From positions 62,001-126,000 of IMG/VR virus record IMGVR_UViG_3300032315_001715: a stretch of DNA of 64,000 nucleotides. One strand, 5' to 3'. The notes beneath the pieces are model-generated. The model ran no database searches. It was not told the origin of the DNA and saw only the letters and a list, made by a program, of their open reading frames with translations. The translations under genes were made by a program, and so were the position numbers. Positions 4,791 to 50,837 of this stretch are shown here, one piece after another; the stretch's first letter is position 1, and each line of letters begins with the position of its first letter.

Positions 4791-5362
4791 CGCGGCTTCA
4801 CCACCAGGCTCCACCAGCTTTCCATGCCTGCACCGTCATGATCTGAAATGACCTGGAGATCCAGTCCTTGTGCGTCTGCCCAAGCGACCATTTCCCTGCA
4901 CCATTGCGCATGATCACCGTGATGTGCCTGGGCAATGCTGGTGTCATAGCGGCGAGCATCATTCAGCGTCCTGGGCAGTCGCATGGGCTTGAGCACCAAG
5001 CCCTCGTTGATTGAGCGCGCGATGCGGCTTTGCAGCTCTTGGATGGCCAAGAACACCTCTTGCCGGCGTCTCTCCGCCTTCTCTCGCAGTTCCCGGCTTG
5101 CGGCCGCATCGCGATCCAAGCGCAGTCTCTCCGCCTCCTGGATGTTCTCGCGCAGCAGCGCGCCCAGGGTCTTGTGGGCAGGTTCAACCGGATCAGGCAC
5201 AGCAAGGTCCAGCTCGCGATCCAACCAACGGCGGGCTTCGTTCATGGCCATGCTGATGCCTTGCTGATGCTCTCCACCGGCTCGGAGAGCCCGGATGCTG
5301 GCAACTTCCTTTTCATACAGTGCATGCACTTCGCTGCGGGTCATGCGGGGTTTATCGCTCAT
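4787..5362 (-). CDS. hypothetical coiled-coil protein
   Basis: 191-aa ORF translationally coupled to neighbours. Confidence 0.6.
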   Translation of the reverse strand: MSDKPRMTRSEVHALYEKEVASIRALRAGGEHQQGISMAMNEARRWLDRELDLAVPDPVEPAHKTLGALLRENIQEAERLRLDRDAAASRELREKAERRRQEVFLAIQELQSRIARSINEGLVLKPMRLPRTLNDARRYDTSIAQAHHGDHAQWCREMVAWADAQGLDLQVISDHDGAGMESWWSLVVKPR

Positions 5363-5586
5363 CGCTGCCGAATCCCAACCTCAACGCGATCGCTGACATA
5401 CCAGCAGGCAAAGCTGTTGGGATCTCGGCTGGAATAGCATTGGTATTGCAGATATGCACCCAGTCCCCAGAATCCAAGGATGCCAACAAACATCAGCACC
5501 CAGAGCACCATGAACATGCGGCCGAACAGATCCATGCGCCGGCGGCTTTTTTCAAAGCGATTTTCAAATTGGTTTCGATTAAGCAT
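5359..5586 (-). CDS. small membrane protein
   Basis: Single hydrophobic helix; promoter upstream at ~5632-5660. Confidence 0.55.
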   Translation of the reverse strand: MLNRNQFENRFEKSRRRMDLFGRMFMVLWVLMFVGILGFWGLGAYLQYQCYSSRDPNSFACWYVSDRVEVGIRQR

Positions 5587-5683: not shown

Positions 5684-5953
5684 TCACGCCCATTTCATCA
5701 GGAATGCGATCTTGTGCTCTTGGCTGGGAAATTCAATGTAGCCGTCAATGCCAAATGTTGTCACTCCGCCAAAGCTGGCTATCTCCTCGTTGACACGCGC
5801 ATCGGCAATGGGCCTGGCCATGGAATCACCCTCCGTGTCATTGAGATCGTCCCAGGCCCGATCAAGCAGATTGGAATAAGCAGGATGGCATTCTCGGCCG
5901 CCGTTTTCCAGCCGACGATACAGCGGGAGCGTGTTATCGCACCCGCTGCTCAT
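5684..5953 (-). CDS. small protein of the F..D/E...F...W paralog family
   Basis: C-terminus IEFPSQEHKIAFLMKWA. Confidence 0.55.
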   Translation of the reverse strand: MSSGCDNTLPLYRRLENGGRECHPAYSNLLDRAWDDLNDTEGDSMARPIADARVNEEIASFGGVTTFGIDGYIEFPSQEHKIAFLMKWA

Positions 5954-5963
5954 CGGTCCACCA

Positions 5964-6554
5964 TTAGCGTCGTTGATTCTGGCGAAGCACGCCCAGCGGT
6001 AAGCTCACCGGATGTTGGCTGCATGCCTGCGGGTCTCCCTGTCCGGCCTCGGTGAGAAATGCTGTGTTGGCAGGCACCTGTCCCATGGGGCAGCGGCAGC
6101 TGGCCATGCCGTTGCCGAGATTCTCGCAGAGGAATGAAAAGCAATTGGATGCGTTGTAGCCCTGGTTGAGCTCGGCACCGCACATCTGCACCCTGGCCCT
6201 CATGTCCCGGGGGCGGTGTGAGAATCCCGATGCTTCCTGTGGGTAAAACACCCGCGGTGCGAACAAGCTCCACACCGTGCCTTCTCGGGGGATGTCGCAG
6301 GTACCTGTCATGTTGCCCGCCTGCGTGTCGGCCAGCGCGGTACCCGTCAGTATGGGGCAGCGGCATTCCACCTCGGGATAGCTCTCACCAGACGTGGTGG
6401 TGATGGTTCGACCCGTGGGGGTGCAGGTCGACGCGGCACACAATGCAAACTCCCCGTTGCAGGTGGTCAGGCCCTGGGTGCCGGGGCTTTGCGCTGCCGT
6501 GGGCGATGTCATCACCGCCGCGATGATGATAATGATGGCTATGATGTATTTCAT
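5964..6554 (-). CDS. Cys-rich secreted protein
   Basis: Start MKYIIAIII signal peptide; about 12 Cys; TAAATA upstream near 6588. Confidence 0.65.
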   Translation of the reverse strand: MKYIIAIIIIIAAVMTSPTAAQSPGTQGLTTCNGEFALCAASTCTPTGRTITTTSGESYPEVECRCPILTGTALADTQAGNMTGTCDIPREGTVWSLFAPRVFYPQEASGFSHRPRDMRARVQMCGAELNQGYNASNCFSFLCENLGNGMASCRCPMGQVPANTAFLTEAGQGDPQACSQHPVSLPLGVLRQNQRR

Positions 6555-31352: not shown

Positions 31353-31802
31353 TTAATCCAAATATAGGCCACTATTAGCTGGATGTTTCATGACCTCGAC
31401 GGTTCGCACGGATACCCGAGATTCTAGATCTCTCTCGCACAACCAGCCCCGCACGCGGTGCCATATCGTCTCGGCAAATCGCTCCATCCCGACACCTGAC
31501 ATGATTCTTAGGTCAATTACTCCGTAGGAGTGAAGGCGCTGAAAATCAGTTAATCTAGGGTCGTCCTCAGCAATACATGTCGTATGGCTAAATGTTTCCT
31601 TGAGCCACGAATCGATTTCTTCCATATCATCCAGATCCAATGCTCGACCCGTTTCATCGAGCATGGTCACCGCAAGCACTATCTTAACATGCAAAGAATA
31701 ACCGTGCAGAAATCTAGCCTTGGATTTTGCTTTCCAATTGCGCCAAGCACACGTAAGTCCTGCGTTATGATCGTAGGTTTTGGTGGTAATATATTTTCCC
31801 AT
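31353..31802 (-). CDS. 6-pyruvoyl-tetrahydropterin synthase / QueD-like protein
   Basis: CAWRNW..LHGYS, LDETGRALD, FSHT, GMERFAE. Confidence 0.75.
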   Translation of the reverse strand: MGKYITTKTYDHNAGLTCAWRNWKAKSKARFLHGYSLHVKIVLAVTMLDETGRALDLDDMEEIDSWLKETFSHTTCIAEDDPRLTDFQRLHSYGVIDLRIMSGVGMERFAETIWHRVRGWLCERDLESRVSVRTVEVMKHPANSGLYLD

Positions 31803-31874
31803 GTTGATCTCCCTTTGCGTTATTAAACCGATGTCTTGACCTATAATCAATATAGCAAGCATACTCGTCATACC

Positions 31875-33884: not shown

Positions 33885-35300
33885 TCAGGCCGTGACGGCC
33901 TGATAGCGCTCACCCATGATGGTCTCAAGCATGATGTCTCGCGGCGTGAAGTTCTCTGCCGCCAGGATGCTCTTCATGATGCTCGGGCTGAACCCGCTCA
34001 CCATTGCCGTGCCGCGCTGATCGAAGCGCACTGGGCTGTTGCCGGTGGCATCCGGGCGGGCATTGAGATTCCACCACACCAGCTTGGGCAGCTCGTATCC
34101 AGCCGCCTCGAACATGCGCTGGGCAAGATCAAACGCACCCAGGCTTGCACCGCCGGCCCAGGCCGCGTTGAACTCCATGTCGCTCAACACCAGGAGGTAC
34201 CGAGGCATCTGATCAGCCGGCACGCGATTCTGCACCGCCACCTGCAGGATGCTGCGGAACGCGCTCTCCAGGTTGGTGTCGTAACCAACGTTGCGACGCA
34301 CCTGGTTGATCTTGGCTAGCAGGTCTCCCTTGAGCACGTCAATGTGGCTGTCACGGGTGAACGTCAGCCACATGTCCTTGAACGCACCCTGCTGCTTGTC
34401 GGCAACATACAGACCGAGGCTGATTGCCACGTCCATGCAGGTAAGACCTGCACCCGCCTGTCCGCCAACCGGGCAGCTCATGCTACCGCTGACATCCACC
34501 ATCGGAAGGATGGCATCATCACCGAGATAGTTCGGCAGTGCCTCCCACTGCGCCAGTGCCACAGCACGGTCACCATGTGCAACTGCCTTGATGACGTCGT
34601 ACGGATAAAGCACACCGGCGTTGACCTTGCTTGTGCCGTCCTTGAGACCCTCCTTCCAAGCCGCGTAGCGGGTGGCATCGCGCTTGTTGAAGGCCTTCTG
34701 ATAGCGGTTGGCAGCCACGCTAGGAACGTGATCGTAGTTGATCTGATCCCAGGTCTTGGCGCACATCTGCGTCTCAACAACCTTGGTGAGGTCAACGACG
34801 AGTCGGCGGTACTGCTTGGGAGTGAAGTTCAGGTACTTGCGCAGCTCGTTGGCTACCTCGCCCTTGCGGGGCATCCACTTGGCAGCAAGACCGTTACCGC
34901 CACGCAGGGCGCGTGCGATCAGGTCATATGCCGCCATCTTGACCTGCGGCGTCTTGAACTCGAGGAGGTCGTCCCAGCGACCGTACTCGGGTACCAGCGC
35001 AAGATTGCGCATGAGGCTCTCCGGATGGCTGACCTCCAGGTTACGAACGATCTTGCGGAAGGTCTCACGCTCGCCAGCACCGCCGCGAACGTCGCGCGCC
35101 CAGAATAGGATCTTCATGGCCACAGCCGGCTCGGCCGCATATGCACGGGCAAATGCGCCGGTGAGATCCTTGCCGCGGCTGGAACCGATGGCGAAGAACA
35201 GATCCACGTTAGGGTCAAGGCTGCTTTGATTGGTTGCCATGCCGTTGGCAGTAAGGCTCGGCTGCATGGTATTCTGTAGTGCCTGTGCGAAAGTGACCAT
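33885..35300 (-). CDS. DUF2828-family Ro60/TROVE-like protein with a C-terminal vWA domain
   Basis: Start MVTFAQ after a GAGGAG RBS; TANG, DLFF, RDVRGGAGER, YGRWDDL, AAKWMPR, VPSVA, MIDAS DVSGSM, SDMEF, WNL, VSGFS. Confidence 0.85.
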   Translation of the reverse strand: MVTFAQALQNTMQPSLTANGMATNQSSLDPNVDLFFAIGSSRGKDLTGAFARAYAAEPAVAMKILFWARDVRGGAGERETFRKIVRNLEVSHPESLMRNLALVPEYGRWDDLLEFKTPQVKMAAYDLIARALRGGNGLAAKWMPRKGEVANELRKYLNFTPKQYRRLVVDLTKVVETQMCAKTWDQINYDHVPSVAANRYQKAFNKRDATRYAAWKEGLKDGTSKVNAGVLYPYDVIKAVAHGDRAVALAQWEALPNYLGDDAILPMVDVSGSMSCPVGGQAGAGLTCMDVAISLGLYVADKQQGAFKDMWLTFTRDSHIDVLKGDLLAKINQVRRNVGYDTNLESAFRSILQVAVQNRVPADQMPRYLLVLSDMEFNAAWAGGASLGAFDLAQRMFEAAGYELPKLVWWNLNARPDATGNSPVRFDQRGTAMVSGFSPSIMKSILAAENFTPRDIMLETIMGERYQAVTA

Positions 35301-35322: not shown

Positions 35323-35375
35323 AGGTTGAACTTGGTTTGTTTGATAAAAACAATTGGTGTTGCGGAACTCAACCT
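35323..35375 (-). ncRNA. Y-RNA-like element A (5' leader hairpin of the TROVE-like gene)
   Basis: AGGTTGAGTTCCGCAAC...AAGTTCAACCT closing stem with a variant CCGCAA motif. Confidence 0.6.
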
Positions 35376-35490: not shown

Positions 35491-35622
35491 TGGATCAACT
35501 TTTGTGGATCGCTGCCTTTACCATTTGGCTATCCCCCTTCGGTTGGTAGGGGGAGTTGGACTTGAACCAACAGTGGCTTTCGCCGGCGATTTTACCTTCC
35601 AGTTTGTTGCTGAACTGATCCA
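35491..35622 (-). ncRNA. Y-RNA-like element C: circularly permuted tRNA (Tyr/Leu-like, long variable arm)
   Basis: TGGATCAGTTCAGCAA..GTAAA ATCGC, variable arm, GTTGG TTCAAGT CCAAC, TCCCCCT A CCA, linker ACCGA, AGGGGGA TA GCC AAATGGTAAA GGC A GCGAT..AGTTGATCCA; own promoter TTGACA-17-TAACAT at 35631-35659. Confidence 0.85.
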
Positions 35623-35725
35623 TTAAATCTATGTTATGCTAGTTTTTAGCTCTTGTCAACGACTAATTTGCGCTGTAATCAACTTTCTTATTTCTAATAA
35701 CTTGCATTTACATTATAATTCGACA

Positions 35726-35845
35726 GGATCACCTTTACGTTGCTCTACCTCTGAGCTACACCCCCATAGTAAATTGTGGCGGGGATGGCAAGGAATTGAA
35801 CCTGCGACCTACGGCTTGACATGCGTTTAATTGCTGAACTGATCC
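35726..35845 (-). ncRNA. Y-RNA-like element D: circularly permuted tRNA-Asp(GTC)-like
   Basis: GGATCAGTTCAGCAA..T GTC AA GCCGT AGGTC GCAGG TTCAATT CCTTGC CATCCCC G CCA, 11-nt linker, GGGGGTG TA GCTC AGAGGTA GAGC A ACG..TGATCC; promoter TTGACT-17-TAATAT at 35855-35883. Confidence 0.85.
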
Positions 35846-35961
35846 ATTAACGTAATATTAGTGCAAATATCTCATCTAGTCAATGCGTATTTTGGCTAAA
35901 TATTGTGTGCAGTTCGCGGGCCGGAATCCCCAACTGCTCTATAACCGATAGGAGTCACAGC

Positions 35962-36621
35962 ATGACTATGTACCATAGAATACCATCAGGTTTCTACATT
36001 TATGCGTATATTCGAAATCAAACATCTACACAAGGACAGAAAGGAACTCCCTATTATATCGGAAAGGGAAAAGGATATAGAGCATACGTGGATCATAAGA
36101 ATATTCCTGTTCCAAAAGACTTTGATTACATAGTCATTATGGAAGAGAACTTAACTGAATTAGGGGCACTTGCGTTAGAGCGTCGATACATACGGTGGTA
36201 CGGAAAAATAAGTGATGGCTCTGGCATACTTCGAAACATGAATGACGGAGGAACAGGAGGATCCCATAGCTTACAATCTCGCCAAAAGATTTCAGAGTCG
36301 GCCAAAAGTCGACCTACCATGCCACAACATGTTCGAGAAAAACTGAGCAAATCGTTAATAGGTCGTAAATTATCCGATGAACACCGGAGAAAGATAAAAG
36401 AAAGCGCCAGCCGCAAGCTTACGGGCCCCAGATCTTTAGAAATCCGTAAAAAAATACAAGATGCTGCGCTTCGCAGAGGTCCAGTGTCAGAAGACACAAA
36501 AAAGAAACAAAGCGATGCAAATAAGGGCCAATATTGGTGGACAAATGGGGTAAAAGATATACGGTCTCATATAAATCCGGGAAAGTGTTGGCGACGGGGG
36601 AGAACATTCTCTACCAACTGA
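35962..36621 (+). mobile_element. free-standing GIY-YIG-like homing endonuclease with NUMOD3 repeats
   Basis: [34 protein letters not shown]...R.KIS repeats; TAAATA at 35897-35902 and a leader hairpin. Confidence 0.85.
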
Positions 36622-36701
36622 GCTACCGTCCCATATCAGAGGAACGGATCGGATTCGAACCGATGACCTGTAGGTTGAATGTTAGTTGCTGAACTAATCC
36701 C
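36596..36701 (-). ncRNA. Y-RNA-like element E: circularly permuted tRNA, 3' end overlapped by the endonuclease gene
   Basis: GGGATTAGTTCAGCAAC..TTC AA CCTAC AGGTC ATCGG TTCGAAT CCGAT CCGTTCC T, short linker, GGGACGG TA GCTC AGTTGGTA GAG; promoter TTGACA-17-TATTAT at 36710-36738. Confidence 0.8.
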
Positions 36702-36766
36702 TTGCCTTGATAATACGATCGATCAGTGATCGTGTCAACGGAAAAGATCAAATGTCCTGCATAAAT

Positions 36767-37480
36767 ATGCGCATGTTCGATTTCATAAGATTGCTGGAGT
36801 TATCCGGAATAAAATTCCTCCTCGAGGATCTAACGCCTGGGCAGGCCCGTGGCATTTTCAAGCAATATGGTGCTAATGACGCTGATCTCTCGCCCGATAA
36901 AATCCGAGCAACCTGGATAAAATTGGTCAGACAGATGCATCCTGACAAGACCGGCGGTGATCACCAACCACTTGCCATGATAAATGCGGCGTATGATGTG
37001 CTCAAAGCTCCGGCATCTGCTACGGTGGCCAAGGATGATCGAGGATTTCCGGCCTGGCAAACGGATCAGCGATCAACAAGAAATGACATTGCAACTAATG
37101 ACTACACCGACGTGAATTTCTTCAAGAAGCGCATGTGGGAGCTCAGTGGTAAGAGCCAGGAGAAATGGACCATCTATGCGTTTGATGGCACGTTCTTCCG
37201 CGGCATGGTAACCGTGTTCGGCAGCTCGCGAATTTTCAGAGACATGGCAAAGGCCATGGTAATACATAATAGCCGCGGTGGTAATCCACATCAAACCAGA
37301 GCAGTGTTTGTGCAAGATGATACCGATCCGGATATAATACTGATATGGCTAGACGGCAATGAAATCAGCCCGCCGATACCTATGGAACATGAAAGTCGCA
37401 ATAGGAACCCAGCAAATGATCTCGGATTCACAAGTCGGTTGTCCAAAGTATTGAATCAGATATCGTCAGGTCGAGATTAA
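36767..37480 (+). CDS. J-domain (DnaJ-like) protein, late-expressed
   Basis: IRATWIKLVRQMHPDKTGG..MINAAYDVLK; TAAATA at 36762-36767. Confidence 0.8.
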   Translation: MRMFDFIRLLELSGIKFLLEDLTPGQARGIFKQYGANDADLSPDKIRATWIKLVRQMHPDKTGGDHQPLAMINAAYDVLKAPASATVAKDDRGFPAWQTDQRSTRNDIATNDYTDVNFFKKRMWELSGKSQEKWTIYAFDGTFFRGMVTVFGSSRIFRDMAKAMVIHNSRGGNPHQTRAVFVQDDTDPDIILIWLDGNEISPPIPMEHESRNRNPANDLGFTSRLSKVLNQISSGRD

Positions 37481-37917: not shown

Positions 37918-37930
37918 GAGCTATTTAACA

Positions 37931-37968
37931 GCAAAAGGGCATGCACCCATCGATGCATGCCCTTTTGC
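37931..37968 (-). terminator. intrinsic terminator ending the H-G-F RNA cluster
   Basis: GCAAAAGGGCATGCA...TGCATGCCCTTTTGC inverted repeat. Confidence 0.75.
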
Positions 37969-37977
37969 TTTTTTACA

Positions 37978-38217
37978 GGATGGTTTGTGGTTCGCTTTTT
38001 ATTTCTTTCTGGCAGATTATCTTATCCATATCGCCCAGAGCTGGATTCAAAGTCCAGTTACCGATATGGTCCCACCTTCTGCCCTAGCTTGATTTCTTCC
38101 AAGCAATATCTTGCCTCGTGCAAGACCGATCCTGGCTAAGCCCAGGCAGCCTCGATGACTAATGGACCTAGGATCCAGTCGTCGCCGTTGGGTCGAAGTA
38201 TGCTGCTGTACCCATCC
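37978..38217 (-). ncRNA. Y-RNA-like element F (240 nt, multi-hairpin)
   Basis: GGATGGGTACAGCAGC...AAACCATCC closing stem; several internal hairpins including CTGGA-CTTTGAA-TCCAG. Confidence 0.7.
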
Positions 38218-38233
38218 ATTGATAAATGCCCTC

Positions 38234-38324
38234 AGGAACGTTTTGCCCTTGTTTAGCCAGGCTGGGCTCCTGGTTTTGCTACAAACGTAGCTTCCTGATT
38301 TTAAGGTGTTGCTGCACCGTTCCT
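38234..38324 (-). ncRNA. Y-RNA-like element G
   Basis: AGGAACGGTGCAGCAAC...AAAACGTTCCT closing stem; internal hairpins GCTAC/GTAGC and CCAGG/CCTGG. Confidence 0.7.
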
Positions 38325-38356
38325 TATGGTATTCTCAAATTTCTAAACAACAAAGC

Positions 38357-38409
38357 GGGAAAGCTTTTGGTTTGCGTACAAAGCAATTTTTGTTTGCTGC
38401 ATGTTTCCC
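38357..38409 (-). ncRNA. Y-RNA-like element H
   Basis: GGGAAACATGCAGCAA...TTTCCC; promoter TTGACA-17-TACATT at 38418-38446. Confidence 0.65.
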
Positions 38410-38429
38410 TTGCACGTAATGTATGTGAT

Positions 38430-39275
38430 CTAGGTCACAGTGTCAATCGCTAATCCATGGGATTTTTGAACAAATCCAACTAGCTGATCAGCAAAGATGT
38501 CCACTGCCTCCTTGGTCGGATGGTTGGTCCTAGTCATCATGGACTTTTTGATCGTCGGTAACCAACCTGTAAATATTGGATGATCAGTTGTGCTCCATAC
38601 CGGTAACCAATGAGATTGGTCAATGGTTGAATAAATCATCCTTGGTAGATATGCACCATTTGGTCTTGGCATGGGATGCAAGCTATTCCAAAACACATAT
38701 TTCACACCGATTGAATCTAGAAAAAACTGCAAGGTCAGCACTGACCTCAGCAGTTGATTGGCCAACCATGTCGGAGTTGCACAGGTGACAAATGCCTTGC
38801 TAAACTCTCGGTGACGTTCATAAAATTCATGTAGATATTGCATGCGATCATTATCATACATCGAAGTTTGTTTGATAAGGTCGTTGATATTAAACGGATT
38901 GAAGGTCATCGCTGCGTGCGAATTCACTTCATCAAATATCATTATACGTGCTGGCTCGGTCCAGCCAATAAATGCCATCCATTCGGTTGGATCGCCACCC
39001 GAATCCATCATCGCCTTGAAAAATGCAATGGTATCATATGCTATTACGTCGTTGTTGTTGCCATTTCGGGCCTTGTTAACCACTTCCGTAGAACCCATTA
39101 ACGCATGTACGCGCCCTGATAGATTAACTTTCTGCAGATCGTGCCAGTAGTTGCTGCCCAGGATTCGACTTTCCTCGGTGAGCCTGGGATTCTTGTTGTA
39201 ATCCCAGGCTACATCAAGACCATGAACAAACGAACATCCGTTGAAAAATAATCGAGATGGCATTTGGTCGATCAT
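38430..39275 (-). CDS. SGNH-hydrolase-like protein
   Basis: FFNGCSFVHG, N.A..G, GWT...R, HPT motifs. Confidence 0.7.
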   Translation of the reverse strand: MIDQMPSRLFFNGCSFVHGLDVAWDYNKNPRLTEESRILGSNYWHDLQKVNLSGRVHALMGSTEVVNKARNGNNNDVIAYDTIAFFKAMMDSGGDPTEWMAFIGWTEPARIMIFDEVNSHAAMTFNPFNINDLIKQTSMYDNDRMQYLHEFYERHREFSKAFVTCATPTWLANQLLRSVLTLQFFLDSIGVKYVFWNSLHPMPRPNGAYLPRMIYSTIDQSHWLPVWSTTDHPIFTGWLPTIKKSMMTRTNHPTKEAVDIFADQLVGFVQKSHGLAIDTVT

Positions 39276-39919
39276 AGCACCGTTGACTTTTCATGTCCAA
39301 CACGTATTGTTGGATCTATCCAAATTTCGTGTCCATTCTCCTGGGCAGTCCAACAGAATCCAACGTCCTCGGCGCAAAAATCATGGAATCTTTCATTGCT
39401 GACCCATCTCGGCCGGAACCAAGGGTATTCCATTTGTTCGATGACACCGGCCTTGATGGCAACAAATCCAAATCCAGTATAACTAACTCTGAATGGCTGC
39501 GATCTAAATGCCATTTCGTTGCGATCCATGAACTTAAATACCCCGTGATCAGCAAGATGAGAGAAATCTAGATTTTCCACCACCGGATAATGTTGATTGT
39601 CGGACATGATATATGTGCCACCGGTGATGGGCTTGTCGCTGGAGATCAGCTTGAGAACATCATCTGGTGACCATACCATATCCGAATCGATCCATATCAT
39701 CTGATCGTAGGGTAGTTTCCCTTGCCACGGCAGTTGGGAACGTCCGGCGGTATTCTGGCCGCCTAATATTCGATTTCTAGCATAATACACCACCGGATCA
39801 TATCCCATGCTGTATGCGTAACTGATACCTCGAGCGCTCAATTCGGCAATGGTTGAATTCCACGAGTTGAAATAGTTGGAGCTAAATGTGCGCCCAGGAA
39901 GGCAGAATATTAATTTCAT
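39272..39919 (-). CDS. GT-A fold glycosyltransferase
   Basis: ARNRI, WIDSD, GFGFVAIK, EDVGFC, VGHEK. Confidence 0.85.
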   Translation of the reverse strand: MKLIFCLPGRTFSSNYFNSWNSTIAELSARGISYAYSMGYDPVVYYARNRILGGQNTAGRSQLPWQGKLPYDQMIWIDSDMVWSPDDVLKLISSDKPITGGTYIMSDNQHYPVVENLDFSHLADHGVFKFMDRNEMAFRSQPFRVSYTGFGFVAIKAGVIEQMEYPWFRPRWVSNERFHDFCAEDVGFCWTAQENGHEIWIDPTIRVGHEKSTVL

Positions 39920-40641
39920 ACCATTTTGCTCCTAACCAGATCATCCAATGCAGGTGCGGCCGTTTCGATTGAATCGTAAAAGACCTCATGAAACAAATCG
40001 CCGTCAATGCTGTTACACGGTTCAAGATTGTTGAGTATCTTGAAAGCAGGGCAGTTTGTCATCAATGCATTGATGTTGATCACCTGTCCGCTGGTACCGA
40101 TCATCACCACCACATCTCGGCTAGATAGCCGCTTGAACGCTCGATAGAGATCAGCATACCTCGGGGCAGAATCGTTGAAAAATACCACGCCGGGCTTTAC
40201 ACCCTTGGAACTATTGCACTTCGGGCATCTATCGTTGTCAACCGACCAAGGTTCATATCCAACATCCCAAACATGCCCGCATGCGATGCACTTCATGTCC
40301 TGTAGATATCCGTGTAAATGGATGATATCATCGCACCCGGCACGTTCAAGTAGATCATCGACGTTTTGTGTCAACATGATGGATCTATCGGTGAAATCCT
40401 TCTTCCAATTTGAAAGGAGCCTGTGCCCGATCGTGGGTACAACCGAAGCTAGACTGGACCGCAGGGTGTTGTAAAATCCATGCACAACCTCCCGATAATC
40501 TCGCCATGTTAATGCGTTGCAAACCACGTCGACGTCGTAGCCGTTCCAGAGACCGTTTTGATCTCGAAAAGTTGCTACGCCGCTCGGGGCGCTGAGACCT
40601 GCCCCTGATATCACCACCAATGTCGGTAATCTATCGTCCAT
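39916..40641 (-). CDS. cobB: Sir2/CobB-family NAD-dependent deacylase
   Basis: SGAGLSAPSGVATFRD, TQNVDDL, HLHG, CxxC..CxxC, IGTSG. Confidence 0.9.
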   Translation of the reverse strand: MDDRLPTLVVISGAGLSAPSGVATFRDQNGLWNGYDVDVVCNALTWRDYREVVHGFYNTLRSSLASVVPTIGHRLLSNWKKDFTDRSIMLTQNVDDLLERAGCDDIIHLHGYLQDMKCIACGHVWDVGYEPWSVDNDRCPKCNSSKGVKPGVVFFNDSAPRYADLYRAFKRLSSRDVVVMIGTSGQVININALMTNCPAFKILNNLEPCNSIDGDLFHEVFYDSIETAAPALDDLVRSKMV

Positions 40642-42639: not shown

Positions 42640-43605
42640 CTATGCGGCCTTGCGCTGATTATTCCCAACATGGATGCGCTTGCCAATCTTGTTCATCGTG
42701 AATCCACGTAGACTAAGCTCATTGCGGCTGTCAAAGTCGGCATCGAGCAATCCGCGTGCAAACTGCTCAACATGGTTAACGCTGAATCCATACACCCCTT
42801 GCAGATCAAGAACACGCAGGATCATGTTCTTGATGCGCAGATATCCTAAATCGCGCACCTTGGTCCATTCTAAACAGCCATCTGTCATGGTTACTGATGA
42901 GATGTCCTGATCCGCTAGCATTGTTGTTAGCTCCCAAGCTTCGCTAAGATGCTGGATGCTGCGAATGGTGTTGATGTCGGCGATATCAAATCTTTCCTGG
43001 ATCACCGGCCAAATACGATTGCGGATGTAGTTACGGTCATATTTGTTATCAGAATTGGAAGGATCTTCAATCGCAACCACGCCATGTTCACCGGCCCACG
43101 CTTCAATTTGATCCCGTGTGACATTTAACATCGGGCGGAGAATCATCATTTTAGCATCGTACCAGCAAGGTGCGCTGGTATCCATGGCCTTGAGACCCTT
43201 AACGCCGCTGCCCCTGAACAGCTTGAGCAGGAAGCTTTCACACTGGTCGTTGGCGTGGTGTGCTAAAATCAGTGCATCGGCGCCACTTTCGCAAAACGCC
43301 CGATAACGGGCTTGCCGTGCAGCATATTCTAGATTGTTGCCGAGACCATCGAGGTTAACCTTCTTAACTTCACATGAGATCCGAAGGATCGTGCAGGTTG
43401 CCATGACATGATACGACCAATCCACACTATGTGGATGGATGCCATGATCAACATGCATCACGCGGATAGGTACCGGAAGAAGATCTCGATGTCGTGCCAG
43501 CCAGTGCAGGAGGACCATGCTGTCCATCCCACCGCTAACACCAACGAGGCAGTCTTTCTTACCGTCCAATAGCCGTGCGACGTCATCAACATTAATGATG
43601 TCCAT
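42640..43605 (-). CDS. tilS: tRNA(Ile)-lysidine synthase
   Basis: GVSGGMDS, HVDHG, AARQARY, AHHANDQCE, RPML, EDPSN..RNYIR. Confidence 0.92.
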   Translation of the reverse strand: MDIINVDDVARLLDGKKDCLVGVSGGMDSMVLLHWLARHRDLLPVPIRVMHVDHGIHPHSVDWSYHVMATCTILRISCEVKKVNLDGLGNNLEYAARQARYRAFCESGADALILAHHANDQCESFLLKLFRGSGVKGLKAMDTSAPCWYDAKMMILRPMLNVTRDQIEAWAGEHGVVAIEDPSNSDNKYDRNYIRNRIWPVIQERFDIADINTIRSIQHLSEAWELTTMLADQDISSVTMTDGCLEWTKVRDLGYLRIKNMILRVLDLQGVYGFSVNHVEQFARGLLDADFDSRNELSLRGFTMNKIGKRIHVGNNQRKAA

Positions 43606-48896: not shown

Positions 48897-49730
48897 TTGA
48901 GAATCATTGAATTGGCTAGAAACATCATCAAGGAATCATTTACCGACATCAGCGTTGTTAAACTTGGCATCGGTGCATTGGTAAATCAGGCAGATGCCGA
49001 TCTAGGTGATGAAGCCGCGGCCGCCATAGACGCATTTGTTGGGGTTCCCCACGATGCGATAAAAAAAGGATATACATTTGGAATCATGCATTCCAGACCG
49101 CTTGAAGACGCATATTCTTCCAATCCAAGTCCCCGAGGAATCAAAATGCGTCAGCAGTTGGATTCGGCATTTGCTCCTATAAAGTCGGCATTGAAGTCTA
49201 AGTTTGGCAATGTTATGACGTTGTATCGAGGCCAAGAGAGCATTGATAATGAGAAAACGGAAAGAACCACACTTAGCTGGACATCCGATCCCCGAATTGC
49301 TGCCACGTTCGCCGGTATCGAACCGTGGGAAATGAAGCTGAAGCCCATTACCGATGAACAAATACAATCCGCATTGGACACATATGCCAAAACAGGAGAG
49401 GTTAAATTCCTCAGGAACCGATACGTTCGCACGGACACTCCGACTGATGAGGAAGGAAAGGACGAATTCTATTACGACATATATGACAATCACGACGATC
49501 TACTAACCGACGGCGACGATCTTGAGAATGAATTCAAGGATCATCAGAGATACCATCAGGAATTGATAGATAAACGGGCTCGAAAACTTACAAAGGTGGT
49601 CAGGGCTGAAATACCAGTTGATGACATCATCTGGATAACCGATCGCGCGGGACAAAGCGAATTCATCCTGCACAATCGGCCTGGTGCTCGAGGTTACATT
49701 GATGCTAAAGGAAAGCTGATAAAAGGATAG
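48897..49730 (+). CDS. putative ADP-ribosyltransferase-fold protein, late-expressed
   Basis: TLYRG, LSWTSD..A..FA, QSEFI (R-S-E pattern); N-terminus MRIIELARNIIKES; TAAATA at 48850-48855. Confidence 0.55.
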   Translation: MRIIELARNIIKESFTDISVVKLGIGALVNQADADLGDEAAAAIDAFVGVPHDAIKKGYTFGIMHSRPLEDAYSSNPSPRGIKMRQQLDSAFAPIKSALKSKFGNVMTLYRGQESIDNEKTERTTLSWTSDPRIAATFAGIEPWEMKLKPITDEQIQSALDTYAKTGEVKFLRNRYVRTDTPTDEEGKDEFYYDIYDNHDDLLTDGDDLENEFKDHQRYHQELIDKRARKLTKVVRAEIPVDDIIWITDRAGQSEFILHNRPGARGYIDAKGKLIKG

Positions 49731-49739
49731 GGCGGGATT

Positions 49740-50005
49740 TCTCCCGCCCCTTCTGTTTCTAGGCCTTCCTTGTGGCCCAATGGAATTACGCTGCTAGCAG
49801 CTCATTCTCAAATGCTGCGTTATCATTTGCTGCATTTACAATTTTCTTGCGTTAAGGTAGCTTGCGCACCGCAACCGCACTATTGCTAGATTCCTTTTGC
49901 CCTTAATGCTGCCAATCGATCCCAAATCCGGCCCATAAATGGTGGACCGGAGGAGAATTGAACTCCTGTCTTGTTCAGCTTATTTGGCTACAGTCAAACA
50001 GTTAC
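49740..50005 (-). ncRNA. ssrA: two-piece (circularly permuted) tmRNA
   Basis: GAC AGGAG TTCAATT CTCCT CCGGTCC A CCA, TTTAT linker, GGGCCGG (G3-U70); tag ORF 49786-49833 AANDNAAFENELLAA*; terminator hairpin ~49729-49750; ends approximate. Confidence 0.93.
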
Positions 50006-50036
50006 ATCTTTATTTATGCGAAATTCTCCTCAGTTG

Positions 50037-50837
50037 TCAACCTCGTATTCTCCCCCTTTTTAATCCAAGATTAGATATTGTTGGGTCCAATTTTTTTAGG
50101 GAGTAATTTCTATGCCCGTCATTATACCAAGATCGTCCATACGCCGGTGATTTATGATTCTTTTTCAAATCTTTCCATTGATCCAATGAGATCCATCCGT
50201 TTGGTTCAGAACCAGGAATATACCTATGACAGGTGTTCAATATTGAAATGCTTGGGATCGGGCCTTGATGATTTTGATCGATAAAAAATTTGGTACCATG
50301 CATACCGTTCCGATTACCTGACATTGATTTTGATAACCTGGCAACACGCTCGGCTCTTTTTTCTGGAGATAACCCTTTCCATTTATTTGGATCAATCTGT
50401 CCATTTGTTATTCGAGCTTTCCATCCATGATTTTTAGCATTGGCCCAAGTTTCTTCGGTCCAATACTTGGTCCCTCCTACTTTAATTTCCCCAGATTGGC
50501 ATTTTTGTCGAAGTGCCTGTAGATTTTTGCGATGTTCGGGCAAATCGTGATTAATGTGATCCCAACCTCCAACACCCCCGCATTTAAGATTATAAGTATC
50601 TTTCCTTTTTACAAACGATTCTGTTACAATTTCAGCTTCTGCGGCAAAAGCGTCGTCAGATGATTCAAAAGTTTCTATGATTTCTTTTCTGAAGTTATGA
50701 ATTCCATATTTCTTTATTGCCCGAATTATTGCCGTACCCGAACCCATGTAATCATCGTCAAATGATTCAGATTTATGTACGCCGACATAGATTTTATGAT
50801 TGATAAGATTTGTGATGCGATATAGATAATACATCAA
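50037..50837 (-). mobile_element. Seg-like GIY-YIG homing endonuclease
   Basis: YYLYRITNLINHKIYVGVHK, YMGSG, KYGIHNF.KE, YNL..GG, WYNDG. Confidence 0.88.

What the first reader, a model, noticed from the sequence alone, without database searches (positions are those of the whole stretch)
35491..36701. Three circularly permuted tRNAs opened at the anticodon loop, two with encoded CCA
Seen: elements C, D and E read anticodon-3' strand, variable region, T arm, acceptor-3' strand with discriminator (plus CCA in C and D), a short linker, acceptor-5' strand, D arm, anticodon-5' strand. Acceptor stems pair fully (AGGGGGA/TCCCCCT, GGGGGTG/CATCCCC, GGGACGG/CCGTTCC). D keeps T-GTC-AA and G73 (Asp-like). 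C keeps GTA-AA, A73 and a long variable arm (Tyr-like). The layout matches the phage's own two-piece tmRNA (CCA-TTTAT-G1). Inference: RNase P and 3' trimming could turn them into chargeable two-piece tRNA mimics lacking a closed anticodon loop. They could act as decoys or replacements against host anticodon nucleases, as a store of tRNA halves for repair, or as sponges for synthetases.
Basis: partly seen in the sequence, partly recalled or inferred. Interest (0 to 1): 0.9.

Follow-up and report, generated by a model that had tools for sequence, protein, structure and literature searches.

The report
tRNA-mimic Y RNAs beside phage Ro
The three "permuted tRNAs" are real, but they belong to an array of at least eight small RNAs that share an end-to-end helix and a GUUCAGCAA motif and sit next to a phage gene for a Ro60-like ring protein. 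This looks like a phage version of the bacterial Ro/Y-RNA particle, whose RNAs imitate tRNAs, and the RNA family is common in phages and appears to be undescribed.

Summary
C (35621-35492) and D (35845-35726) are complete circularly permuted tRNA-like RNAs with 7-bp acceptor stems, A73/G73 and encoded CCA. E (36700-~36609) is a decayed copy whose 3' part was replaced by a homing-endonuclease cassette.

Each element starts with a 6-8 bp helix strand followed by GUUCAGCAA, and ends with the complementary strand. Two more such RNAs (B, A) follow, then a 471-aa ORF (35300-33885) whose predicted fold matches only Ro60 proteins over its full length. A second unit of three more RNAs lies at 38411-37978.

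The same helix-plus-motif RNAs lie on the gene strand next to homologues of this protein in dozens of IMG/VR contigs and in Bas63, P100, Faith1, S13, Aeh1 and a Campylobacter phage. The helix shows compensatory changes. The inner modules vary: anticodon-arm mimics, T arms, or whole tRNA bodies in three topologies.

The best reading is YrlA-type tRNA-mimic Y RNAs of a phage Ro-like particle. C and D are probably opened by RNase P into two-piece, CCA-ended mimics, as is known for M. smegmatis YrlA. Neither Rfam 15 nor the literature I searched describes this family. It is a new variant of a known kind.

The parts
36710..36738 (-). Sigma-70-like promoter of element E (TTGACA, 17-nt spacer, TATTAT)
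   Evidence: 11 of 12 matches. The predicted start is 2-3 nt before the helix. This is a consensus match only.
36609..36700 (-). Element E, a 3'-truncated permuted tRNA-like RNA. Helix 5' strand 36700-36695, motif GUUCAGCAA 36694-36686, T arm 36664-36648, acceptor 3' strand 36647-36641, 8-nt loop without CCA, acceptor 5' strand 36632-36626, D arm 36623-36609.
   Evidence: Rfam YrlA 24.9 bits. Alignment with L003 shows loss of the anticodon-5' strand, of the 3' helix strand and of G73-CCA.
35962..36621 (+). GIY-YIG/NUMOD3 homing-endonuclease ORF. Its last codons run into the D arm of E. The cassette, with its 5' UTR from about 35900, separates E from D.
   Evidence: Pfam NUMOD3. PHROG 314 homing endonuclease. 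The cassette is absent from the close relative L003. A similar cassette with the same 5' UTR is present in L004.
35855..35883 (-). Sigma-70-like promoter of element D (TTGACT, 17-nt spacer, TAATAT)
35726..35845 (-). Element D, an Asp-like permuted tRNA mimic. Helix GGAUCA 35845-35840 pairs with UGAUCC 35731-35726. Motif 35839-35831. Closed anticodon-like loop AUGUCAA (GUC at 35820-35818). T arm with a bulged U. Acceptor CAUCCCC / G73 (35780) / CCA 35779-35777, 11-nt linker, GGGGGUG, D arm, then ACG pairing back to CGU.
   Evidence: Rfam YrlA 29 bits, E = 0.001. Family model R1 25.6 bits, E = 0.001 over the whole window.
35631..35659 (-). Sigma-70-like promoter of element C (TTGACA, 17-nt spacer, TAACAT)
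35492..35621 (-). Element C, a Tyr-like class-II permuted tRNA mimic. Helix GGAUCA(GU) 35621-35616 pairs with (GU)UGAUCC ending at 35492. Motif 35615-35607. GUA-AA (35595-35591). AUCGC 35590-35586 pairs with GCGAU 35512-35508. Variable hairpin, T arm 35571-35555, UCCCCCU-A73-CCA (CCA 35546-35544), linker ACCGA, AGGGGGA 35538-35532, 3-bp D stem.
   Evidence: The MFE fold reproduces all arms. ARAGORN on the rotated sequence calls tRNA-Tyr(gta). Orthologues occur in L003 and in Cronobacter phage S13.
35387..35470 (-). Element B: the same helix (GGAAUCG/CGAUUCC) and motif, enclosing two hairpins and a T-arm-like hairpin.
   Evidence: R1 23.6 bits, E = 0.003.
35324..35374 (-). Element A: a minimal member (GGUUGA/UCAACC, motif GUUCCGCAA, one inner hairpin) lying in the leader just before the RBS and ATG of the Ro-like ORF.
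   Evidence: 44 bits, but this sequence was in the training set via L001. An element in this position is seen in 34 of 56 related loci.
33885..35300 (-). Ro60-like protein gene (471 aa): a helical-repeat ring domain (Pfam DUF2828) plus a vWA domain (DUF7788) with a conserved DxSxS.
   Evidence: Pfam. PHROG 850 'RNA-binding protein'. AF2 model with pLDDT 78. The Foldseek top three hits are all Ro60 proteins over their full length: 9KOP at 1e-10, 2NVO, 9NEN. Invariant D269/S271/S273.
37925..38446 (-). Second transcription unit of the same RNA family. Promoter 38446-38418. Elements F1 38411-38352, F2 38323-38235 and F3 38217-37978. Hairpin-U terminator at about 37962-37925.
   Evidence: (F1, E = 0.4). 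Helix, motif variant (AUGCAGCAA, GUGCAGCAA, GUACAGCAG) and 3' CCUG/CCCG all match the family pattern.
49786..49999 (-). Two-piece (permuted) tmRNA gene with ACCA-UUUAU-G1.

Best explanation
C, D and E are members of a family of Y-RNA-like small RNAs, closest to bacterial YrlA. They are the likely RNA partners of the Ro60-like protein encoded directly downstream on the same strand.

Each RNA has two modules.
- The constant module is a terminal 6-8 bp helix formed by the two ends of the transcript. It is flanked on the 5' strand by single-stranded GUUCAGCAA and on the 3' side by A-rich sequence and CCUGU. By analogy with the conserved helix of Y RNAs, this is the binding site for the Ro-like ring (inferred).
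- The variable module imitates tRNA. In C, D and E it is a whole tRNA body joined to the constant helix at the anticodon stem or loop, so the gene order is circularly permuted and the acceptor stem is closed by a loop.

In C and D that loop reads N73-CCA-linker-G/A+1. RNase P and 3' exonucleases probably open it, giving a two-piece RNA with a mature CCA end, held together by the acceptor stem and the terminal helix (inferred from sequence statistics and from M. smegmatis YrlA).

The particle then presents tRNA look-alikes with Tyr-like and Asp-like identity sets to tRNA-recognising proteins. The most likely purpose is to tether or block them during infection. Which proteins, and to what effect, is not shown.

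E is a decaying copy truncated by a homing-endonuclease cassette.
For: Protein:
- The ORF 24 nt downstream of the last RNA is a full-length structural match to Ro60 proteins and to nothing else, with a conserved MIDAS-type DxSxS.

Association between RNA and gene:
- In 56 IMG/VR loci fetched with the protein, the 9-mer GTTCAGCAA occurs at 38 unique sites on the gene strand and 2 on the other strand.
- 28 of the 38 sites have the exact reverse complement of the preceding hexamer 30-250 nt downstream, against about 2 expected. Fourteen different hexamers are used.
- A looser scan gives 198 hits on the gene strand and 43 on the other.
- Going the other way, 120 viral contigs were fetched with the 15-mer alone. 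Of these, 60 have the closing strand and 20 of those hold the Ro-like gene within the short locus. Of the 60 without a closing strand, none does.

Helix covariation:
- 6 of 8 pairs have double changes. There are 71 compensatory cells against 21 in shuffles, and 92% of cells are paired against 22-58% when the partner is slid.

Architecture:
- The V-T-acceptor-D order and the weak YrlA matches agree with the YrlA layout (PMC4201824).

Processing:
- NCCA is enriched in the permuted members.

Expression:
- Promoters are placed 2-3 nt before each helix in the window and in L003.

Breadth:
- The same RNAs lie next to the gene in Bas63, S13, Aeh1, phiM12, P100, Faith1 and a Campylobacter phage.

Mimics rather than decoders:
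- Position 33 is G or A in several members, U55 is G in several, and D has a T-stem bulge.
Against: - There are no expression, binding or processing data. Everything rests on sequence, a predicted structure and genomic association.
- The protein has no detectable sequence similarity to Ro60. The structural match is moderate (TM 0.50-0.55).
- The YrlA covariance model is far below its threshold, and the YrlA 5' motif GNCGAAN0-1G is replaced by a different one.
- My family model R1 does not recover C or E.
- The helix test used sequences that I had picked for having a helix. One search is the unbiased version.
- Forty of the 60 contigs with a closed element show no Ro-like gene within the fetched stretch. 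This could reflect short loci or a looser linkage.
- The cloverleaf-like fold of D is 4-6 kcal/mol above its MFE.
Confidence: 0.65

Rival explanations
1. Decoy or competitive inhibitor. This concerns function and is compatible with the best explanation. The Ro-like particle would display tRNA bodies and bare anticodon-arm mimics with many different triplets, so that host tRNA-targeting defence nucleases or other tRNA-binding factors bind them instead of real tRNAs.
For: - The small relatives carry a 4-5 bp stem with a 7-nt C/U-U-NNN-A-A loop, with different triplets within one array.
- C and D keep coherent identity sets: GUA + A73 + a long variable arm, and GUC + G73. The Tyr-like set is conserved in L003 and in the distant phage S13.
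- Hughes et al. proposed that YrlA competitively inhibits an anticodon nuclease (PMC7790460).
- Bas63 gp130, a homologue 39% identical to the window protein, was reported to counter the ppl defence system (PMC11482910).
Against: No nuclease target is known. ppl is not known to act on tRNA. Coherent identity elements could simply be inherited from the tRNA genes these modules came from.
Confidence: 0.25
2. True permuted pre-tRNAs, or in S13 and Aeh1 intron-like-interrupted pre-tRNAs. The helix-plus-motif module would be cut out and the ends ligated, giving a circular intermediate. RNase P and 3' trimming would then release functional tRNA-Tyr and tRNA-Asp, as happens for the permuted tRNA genes of the red alga Cyanidioschyzon merolae.
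For: - After rotation, C is called tRNA-Tyr by ARAGORN.
- Joining D's ACG to GC gives a perfect 5-bp anticodon stem and a U33-GUC-A37 loop.
- Unpermuted relatives in S13 and Aeh1 score 41-57 bits with the Rfam tRNA model and carry the module exactly at the anticodon loop.
- RNA ligase genes sit next to the Ro-like gene in P100 and XbC2.
Against: - The same module closes RNAs with no tRNA body, with only a T arm, or with an acceptor-less core. Excision would yield nothing useful from these.
- Position 33 is G in C and in its S13 counterpart, and A in E-type members and Aeh1. U55 is G in several members. D has a bulged T stem.
- I saw no bulge-helix-bulge junction.
- No protein-dependent tRNA splicing is known in bacteria or phages.
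- No ligase was found near the array in this window.
Confidence: 0.05
3. Non-functional debris: fragments of tandem tRNA genes rearranged by homing endonucleases and recombination.
For: E is visibly truncated by the endonuclease cassette and has lost CCA. D and the cassette are absent from the close relative L003. Permutation is the expected product of a tandem tRNA duplication followed by loss of the outer halves.
Against: - The helix and motif are conserved with compensatory changes in phages whose Ro-like proteins are only 30-50% identical.
- Each element has its own promoter.
- NCCA is enriched.
- C has orthologues in L003 and S13.
Confidence: 0.05
4. Cis-acting leader, processing or autoregulatory elements of the Ro-like mRNA, rather than free-standing RNAs.
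For: Element A lies in the 5' leader, 24 nt before the start codon, and an element holds this position in 34 of 56 loci. No terminator separates C, B and A from the ORF.
Against: C, D and E have their own promoters. The second unit at 38411-37978 has its own promoter and terminator and no ORF. In Faith1, Bas63 and S13 the RNAs lie downstream of the gene or among tRNA genes.
Confidence: 0.05

Closest known systems
YrlA, the bacterial tRNA-like Y RNA (Rfam RF02553; Chen et al. 2014, PMC4201824)
   Same: - The 5' and 3' ends pair.
- A conserved motif sits on the 5' strand next to that stem.
- The inner domain runs variable arm, T arm, closed acceptor stem-loop, D arm.
- It is encoded within a few kb of, and on the same strand as, a Ro60-type gene, often with a second, smaller Y RNA.
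- The M. smegmatis member, with a 7-bp acceptor, is cut by RNase P and gets CCA in vivo, giving two pieces.
   Different: - The Rfam model scores 29 and 25 bits against a threshold of 69, and only over the T/acceptor/D core.
- The 5' motif is GUUCAGCAA (core CAGCAA), not GNCGAAN0-1G.
- CCA is encoded, not added.
- D keeps a closed anticodon loop, and C keeps an anticodon triplet with a matching discriminator.
- The partner protein is Pfam DUF2828/DUF7788, not TROVE.
- Arrays hold up to 7-8 RNAs with several module topologies.
Thermus phage phiLo Ro60 with Yrl1 and Yrl2 (PDB 9KOP, 9L5Y; PMC12135203)
   Same: It is a phage-encoded Ro60-type ring protein with Y-RNA-like genes immediately upstream. 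It is also the best structural match of the window protein (E = 1e-10, TM 0.55).
   Different: phiLo Ro60 is a recognisable TROVE protein. Its RNAs were picked by a CGAA motif and are not described as tRNA-like. There is no significant sequence similarity to the window protein, even with a profile.
Bas63 (Escherichia phage JohannRWettstein) gp130 (PhageMaP preprint, PMC11482910)
   Same: It is a homologue of the window protein, 39% identical over 96% of the length. The authors noted a Ro60-like fold, reported that it counters the ppl defence system, and guessed that nearby tRNA genes might be Y RNAs.
   Different: No RNA partner was identified there. Here the candidate partners are found between the annotated tRNAs (L177 5210-5283, 5377-5441, 5832-5902, 5922-6045). 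They are not the annotated tRNAs themselves.
Two-piece (circularly permuted) tmRNA
   Same: Permuted gene order, with the acceptor 3' strand, NCCA and a short AU-rich linker (UUUAU) directly before G+1. It is matured into two base-paired pieces. One copy is present in this window.
   Different: There is no tag reading frame, no pseudoknots and no tmRNA-type D-loop replacement. The Rfam tmRNA_permuted model gives only 14 bits on D. C and D have true D arms and anticodon-stem remnants.
Circularly permuted tRNA genes of Cyanidioschyzon merolae and some green algae
   Same: The 3' half lies upstream of the 5' half. The acceptor ends are joined by a short linker, and the leader and trailer pair with each other.
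   Different: Those mature into working tRNAs through a bulge-helix-bulge junction, the splicing endonuclease and a circular intermediate. Here the leader-trailer module is a sequence-conserved helix plus motif, shared with RNAs that have no tRNA body, and several invariant tRNA positions are lost.

Membership tests
YrlA (Rfam RF02553) | Score at or above the Rfam gathering threshold (69 bits) | tested here: not met
   D scores 29.0 bits and E 24.9 bits, covering model positions 23-87 only. C has no match. No YrlA hit at threshold in 13 related loci.
YrlA (Rfam RF02553) | GNCGAAN0-1G motif near the 5' end (the proposed Ro60 contact; PMC4201824) | tested here: not met
   The 5' region reads GGAUCA-GUUCAGCAA in C and D. 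The only GGCGAAAG in C is the loop of its variable arm, and it is not conserved in L003.
YrlA (Rfam RF02553) | tRNA-like domain in the order variable arm, T arm, acceptor stem-loop, D arm, enclosed by pairing of the 5' and 3' ends | tested here: met
   (C and D). E lacks the 3' closing strand.
YrlA (Rfam RF02553) | Encoded within about 4 kb of, and on the same strand as, a Ro60 orthologue | tested here: met
   C, D and E lie 190-1400 nt upstream of the Ro-like ORF on the same strand. Caveat: the protein is a structural homologue, not a sequence-level one.
YrlA (Rfam RF02553) | Bound by the Ro60 protein in vivo; tRNA-type modifications (TruB, DusA) | not testable with these tools
   Needs immunoprecipitation and modification mapping.
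Ro60 / TROVE proteins (for the ORF at 35300-33885) | Sequence match to Pfam TROVE or to solved Ro60 proteins | tested here: not met
   Pfam gives only DUF2828 and DUF7788. phmmer and a 25-sequence profile against PDB find nothing significant; 9KOP scores E = 0.26 on the vWA part only.
Ro60 / TROVE proteins (for the ORF at 35300-33885) | Fold: a helical-repeat ring followed by a vWA domain with a MIDAS motif | tested here: met
   Foldseek top three hits are 9KOP, 2NVO and 9NEN, aligned over 506-544 columns with TM 0.50-0.55. All later hits are vWA domains only. D269, S271 and S273 are invariant in 25 homologues. The model is of moderate confidence (pLDDT 78).
Functional circularly permuted tRNA genes (C. 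merolae type) | Bulge-helix-bulge junction formed by leader and trailer | tested here: not met
   Leader and trailer form a continuous 6-8 bp helix with a conserved single-stranded motif. I saw no pair of 3-nt bulges around a 4-bp helix. This was judged by inspection only.
Functional circularly permuted tRNA genes (C. merolae type) | The mature product keeps invariant tRNA positions (U33, U54-U55, a regular T stem) | tested here: not met
   C has G33, as does its S13 counterpart. E and L003-E have A33. D has a bulged T stem. Several relatives have UGCAA T loops.
Two-piece tmRNA | Rfam tmRNA_permuted threshold (47 bits) and a tag reading frame | tested here: not met
   14.4 bits on D. ARAGORN finds a tmRNA only at 49695-50033.

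The most novel reading that the evidence does not exclude
The helix-plus-GUUCAGCAA module is an excisable element, in effect a protein-dependent 'intron' or leader-trailer junction. The Ro-like ring would hold it while a nuclease and an RNA ligase cut it out. Phages would then store working tRNAs as permuted genes (window C and D) or interrupted genes (S13, Aeh1), and release them only during infection. This would be a tRNA splicing pathway not known in bacteria or their viruses.
Probability: 0.05. Interest if true: 0.95.

Novelty: new variant of a known kind. Interest (0 to 1): 0.72.

Why it matters
Ro60/Y-RNA particles are conserved from bacteria to humans, yet what the bacterial tRNA-like Y RNAs are for is still open.

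This finding points to a large, unannotated sister system in phages. The protein family is found in about 700 sequenced phage genomes, where it is labelled only 'RNA-binding protein' or DUF2828. Candidate RNA partners can now be named. They come in arrays and carry modular tRNA or anticodon-arm imitations with different triplets.

Several hosts are standard laboratory systems: Bas63 on E. coli K-12, Faith1 on M. smegmatis, and P100 on Listeria. One homologue has already been reported to counter a defence system. The question of what a tRNA-mimicking Y RNA does therefore becomes directly testable by deleting single RNAs or swapping modules.

It also corrects annotation. Over-long 'tRNAs' in S13 and Aeh1, and small ORFs in Bas63, overlap these RNAs.

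Tried and rejected
- blastn of the 1.5-kb array against 50,697 phage records found no match. The relatives are too diverged at the DNA level, so I went through the protein and the motif instead.
- ARAGORN on the native window finds only the tmRNA. On rotated sequences it of 9 elements, and not D.
- The family model R1, built from small members, recovers A, B and D in the window but not C or E, even with filters off. C is probably too long for the model, and E has no 3' strand. I did not build a second model for the long members.
- I first took the stretch at 35960-35900 for the missing 3' end of E. Comparison with L004 shows it is the 5' UTR of the endonuclease cassette.
- Sequence searches of the protein and of its profile against PDB gave nothing. 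Only the fold comparison links it to Ro60.
- I looked for RNA ligase or repair genes near the array in the window and found none among 30 ORFs scanned.
- Literature searches for DUF2828, Ro-like with phage and tRNA, permuted tRNA with phage, and Ro60 with anti-defence found no description of these RNAs. The 2020 Annual Review on bacterial Ro60 was not available.
- Not used: metagenome and genome contig scans, and the large protein homology searches. The viral contigs already gave enough relatives.
Full report
**What is there.** The elements lie on the minus strand.

C runs from 35621 to 35492. From 5' to 3' it reads:
- GGAUCA and GUUCAGCAA, then a short spacer ending in GUA-AA
- AUCGC, a GGC-GAAA-GCC variable hairpin, and a canonical T arm
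- UCCCCCU, A, CCA, a 5-nt linker, AGGGGGA and UA
- a 3-bp D arm, A and GCGAU
- an A-rich spacer and (GU)UGAUCC

RNAfold on its own recovers the terminal helix, the 5-bp anticodon stem, and the variable, T, acceptor and D arms. When the sequence is rotated so that it starts at the acceptor 5' strand, ARAGORN calls it tRNA-Tyr(gta) with a 40-nt insert.

D runs from 35845 to 35726. It has the same ends and motif, a 7-bp acceptor with G73-CCA and an 11-nt linker, and a normal D arm. Its T arm has one bulged U.

E starts at 36700 with GGAUUA-GUUCAGCAA. It has a T arm, a 7-bp acceptor closed by 8 nt without CCA, and a D arm.

Each of the three is preceded by a good sigma-70-type promoter, placed so that transcription would start 2-3 nt before the helix. 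ARAGORN and Rfam at threshold see only the two-piece tmRNA at 49999-49786. With relaxed thresholds, Rfam YrlA matches the T/acceptor/D core of D (29 bits, E = 0.001) and of E (24.9 bits). Both are far below the 69-bit threshold.

**Corrections to the observation.**
- In D the 7-nt loop AUGUCAA is not open. Two pairs (GC/GC) from the 5' segment close it, and these stack on three pairs (CGU with ACG) formed with the 3' segment. The discontinuity is therefore in the 5' strand of the anticodon stem. The same arrangement recurs in relatives L013, L022, L028, L038 and L041.
- In C the break is at the 5' edge of the loop.
- E is not intact. Compared with its orthologue in a phage whose Ro-like protein is 86% identical (L003:3519-3633), it is collinear from the promoter to GGUAGAG and then diverges. 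It lacks the anticodon-5' strand and the 3' helix strand, and G73-CCA has mutated.
- The diverging sequence belongs to a GIY-YIG/NUMOD3 homing-endonuclease cassette on the other strand (35962-36621). L003 has neither this cassette nor D. A related cassette with the same 5' UTR sits in L004.

GUUCAGCAA occurs exactly four times in the window, all on the minus strand within 1.25 kb. These are E, D, C and a fourth element, B (35470-35387). A fifth, A (35374-35324), has GUUCCGCAA. In every intact element the six bases before the motif are complementary to six bases near the 3' end.

A ends 24 nt before the start codon of a 471-aa ORF (35300-33885). Pfam labels this ORF DUF2828 plus DUF7788, and PHROGs labels it 'RNA-binding protein'. 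An AlphaFold2 model built on 25 homologues (pLDDT 78, pTM 0.74) was compared with PDB. The top three matches are the Ro60 of Thermus phage phiLo (9KOP, E = 1e-10, TM 0.55), D. radiodurans Rsr (2NVO) and human Ro60 (9NEN). All three are aligned over their full length. Every later hit is a vWA domain only. The DxSxS of the vWA metal site is invariant. Sequence methods do not see this relationship.

A second unit of the same RNAs lies at 38446-37925. It has a promoter, three elements with motif variants, and a terminator.

**Evidence that RNA and protein belong together.** The protein has homologues in 704 phage records and in 56 IMG/VR loci.
- In those loci GTTCAGCAA occurs at 38 distinct sites on the gene strand and 2 on the other strand.
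- 28 of the 38 have the exact reverse complement of the preceding hexamer 30-250 nt downstream, against about 2 expected. Fourteen different hexamers are used.
- A looser scan finds 198 elements on the gene strand against 43 on the other, in arrays of up to seven directly upstream of the gene. In 34 of 56 loci one element lies in the leader.
- In an alignment of 36 small members, 6 of 8 helix pairs show double changes. These sequences were chosen for having a helix, so one search is the fair test.
- From the RNA side, the 15-mer GGATCAGTTCAGCAA hits 120 viral contigs. Sixty have UGAUCC downstream, and 20 of those contain the Ro-like gene within the short stretch fetched. Of the 60 without the closing strand, none does.

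The family extends well beyond relatives of this phage:
- Bas63, four elements between its tRNA genes
- Cronobacter phage S13, Aeromonas phage Aeh1 and Sinorhizobium phage phiM12
- Listeria phage P100, mycobacteriophage Faith1 and a Campylobacter phage, where the motif reads UAACAGCAA

These are documented.

**The variable module.** The inner part is always a piece of tRNA.
- Small members carry a 4-5 bp stem with a 7-nt C/U-U-NNN-A-A loop. This is an anticodon-arm mimic, and different triplets occur within one array.
- Others carry a T arm, or a T arm plus acceptor.
- Some have the tRNA core without an acceptor stem. The Rfam tRNA model matches its positions 7-64, with the constant helix standing in place of the acceptor.
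- Some are permuted like C, D and E.
- In S13 and Aeh1 the same helix and motif form a closed hairpin inserted at the anticodon loop of an otherwise ordinary tRNA. These are annotated as 113-122-nt tRNAs.

The family is therefore a tRNA-like body fused to one constant module in several topologies.

Among permuted members, about 14 of 35 have NCCA immediately after the acceptor 3' strand, followed by an AU-rich linker that is often UUUAU, as in permuted tmRNA genes. The rest close the acceptor with 3-8 nt. C-type elements in the window, L003 and S13 share GUA-AA, a long variable arm, A73 and CCA. D has GUC with G73. Thr-like and Leu-like members have A73.

Several invariant tRNA positions are nevertheless lost. 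Position 33 is G in C and in its S13 counterpart, and A in E-type members. U55 is G in several members. D has a T-stem bulge.

**Interpretation.** The closest known thing is YrlA. It has terminal pairing, a 5' motif, a variable arm-T-acceptor-D domain, and a location next to the Ro60 gene on the same strand (PMC4201824). M. smegmatis YrlA has a 7-bp acceptor, is cut by RNase P and receives CCA in vivo. A phage Ro60 with two upstream Y-like RNAs has been characterised structurally (phiLo; PMC12135203).

What differs here is the motif, the protein family, the encoded CCA, the retained anticodon features, and the number and modularity of the RNAs.

I conclude that C and D are tRNA-mimic Y-like RNAs of a phage Ro-like particle, probably matured into two pieces.
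- Shown: the sequence features, their conservation and covariation, the linkage to the gene, and the Ro60-like fold of a predicted model.
- Inferred: transcription, protein binding, RNase P cleavage, and any downstream function.

A decoy or tether role towards tRNA-recognising proteins is the most attractive function. It was suggested for YrlA by Hughes et al.. It also fits the report that the Bas63 homologue counters the ppl defence. It remains untested.

The reading that these are pre-tRNAs matured by excision of the module is not excluded, but it does not explain the members without a tRNA body or the lost invariant positions.

**Novelty.** Rfam 15 has no family matching the elements, either in the window or in 13 related loci. 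Full-text searches found no description of RNA partners for DUF2828 or 'Ro-like' phage proteins, and none of permuted tRNA-like genes in bacteriophages. The PhageMaP preprint only speculates that neighbouring tRNAs might be Y RNAs. I therefore rate this as a new variant of a known kind (Ro60/Y RNA). It is of clear interest to RNA and phage biologists, and testable in laboratory phages.

Noticed in passing
window 37925-38446 (minus strand): A second promoter-to-terminator unit holds three more RNAs of the same family: F1 38411-38352, F2 38323-38235 and F3 38217-37978. F3 is 240 nt long and contains a CUGGA-CUUUGAA-UCCAG anticodon-arm mimic.
   Followed up: partly
window 35962-36621 (+) and 50037-50837 (-): Two GIY-YIG homing-endonuclease-like ORFs each sit against a structured-RNA gene. 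One truncates element E. The other is SegE-like and lies directly upstream of the tmRNA. This recalls the seg genes in the T4 tRNA cluster.
   Followed up: partly
L180 (Cronobacter phage S13) 4896-5016 and 5026-5138; L181 (Aeromonas phage Aeh1) 7151-7272: Features annotated as 113-122-nt tRNA-Ser, tRNA-OTHER and tRNA-Val are ordinary tRNA bodies with a hairpin plus UAUUCAGCA or UUUACCGCAA inserted at the anticodon loop. This is the unpermuted form of the same family, so the tRNA labels are probably wrong.
   Followed up: partly
L177 (Escherichia phage JohannRWettstein = Bas63) 5210-5283, 5377-5441, 5832-5902, 5922-6045: Family members lie between the annotated tRNA genes downstream of gp130. 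The small opposite-strand CDS bas63_0137 and bas63_0138 overlap or adjoin them and are probably spurious.
   Followed up: partly
L182 (Listeria phage P100) 5780-7063; L185 (Xanthomonas phage XbC2) 1294-2559: RNA ligase genes lie within 1-2 kb of the Ro-like gene: a 'tRNA splicing ligase' in P100 and an 'RNA ligase' in XbC2. This echoes the bacterial rsr-yrlBA-rtcBA repair operon. No ligase was found near the array in this window.
   Followed up: no
L013 2240-2566 and L015 156-443: In two related viral contigs a permuted tmRNA gene lies 1.5-3.8 kb upstream of the Ro-like gene. In the window it is 14 kb away. tmRNA, tRNAs and the Y-like RNAs tend to share one genome region.
   Followed up: no
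window 35324-35374 and the same position in 34 of 56 related loci: The smallest family member sits in the 5' leader, 10-25 nt before the start codon of the Ro-like gene. This suggests autoregulation by the protein binding its own leader.
   Followed up: no
window 42640-43605 (-), 31353-31871 (-), 39916-40641 (-), 36707-37480 (+): The phage, whose contig reaches 453 kb in IMG/VR (L002), also encodes a TilS-like tRNA lysidine synthetase, a QueD-like enzyme, a Sir2-family protein and a J-domain protein close to the RNA array. Other auxiliary genes are further away: CTP synthase, class Ia RNR, a type II topoisomerase, arginase and a BAX-inhibitor-like protein.
   Followed up: no
L184 (Campylobacter phage vB_Cj_QDYZ) 1910-2356: Three features annotated tRNA-Tyr on the strand opposite to the Ro-like gene lie just upstream of it. 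In the sequence the tRNAs appear to read on the gene strand, so the annotated strand or identity may be wrong.
   Followed up: no
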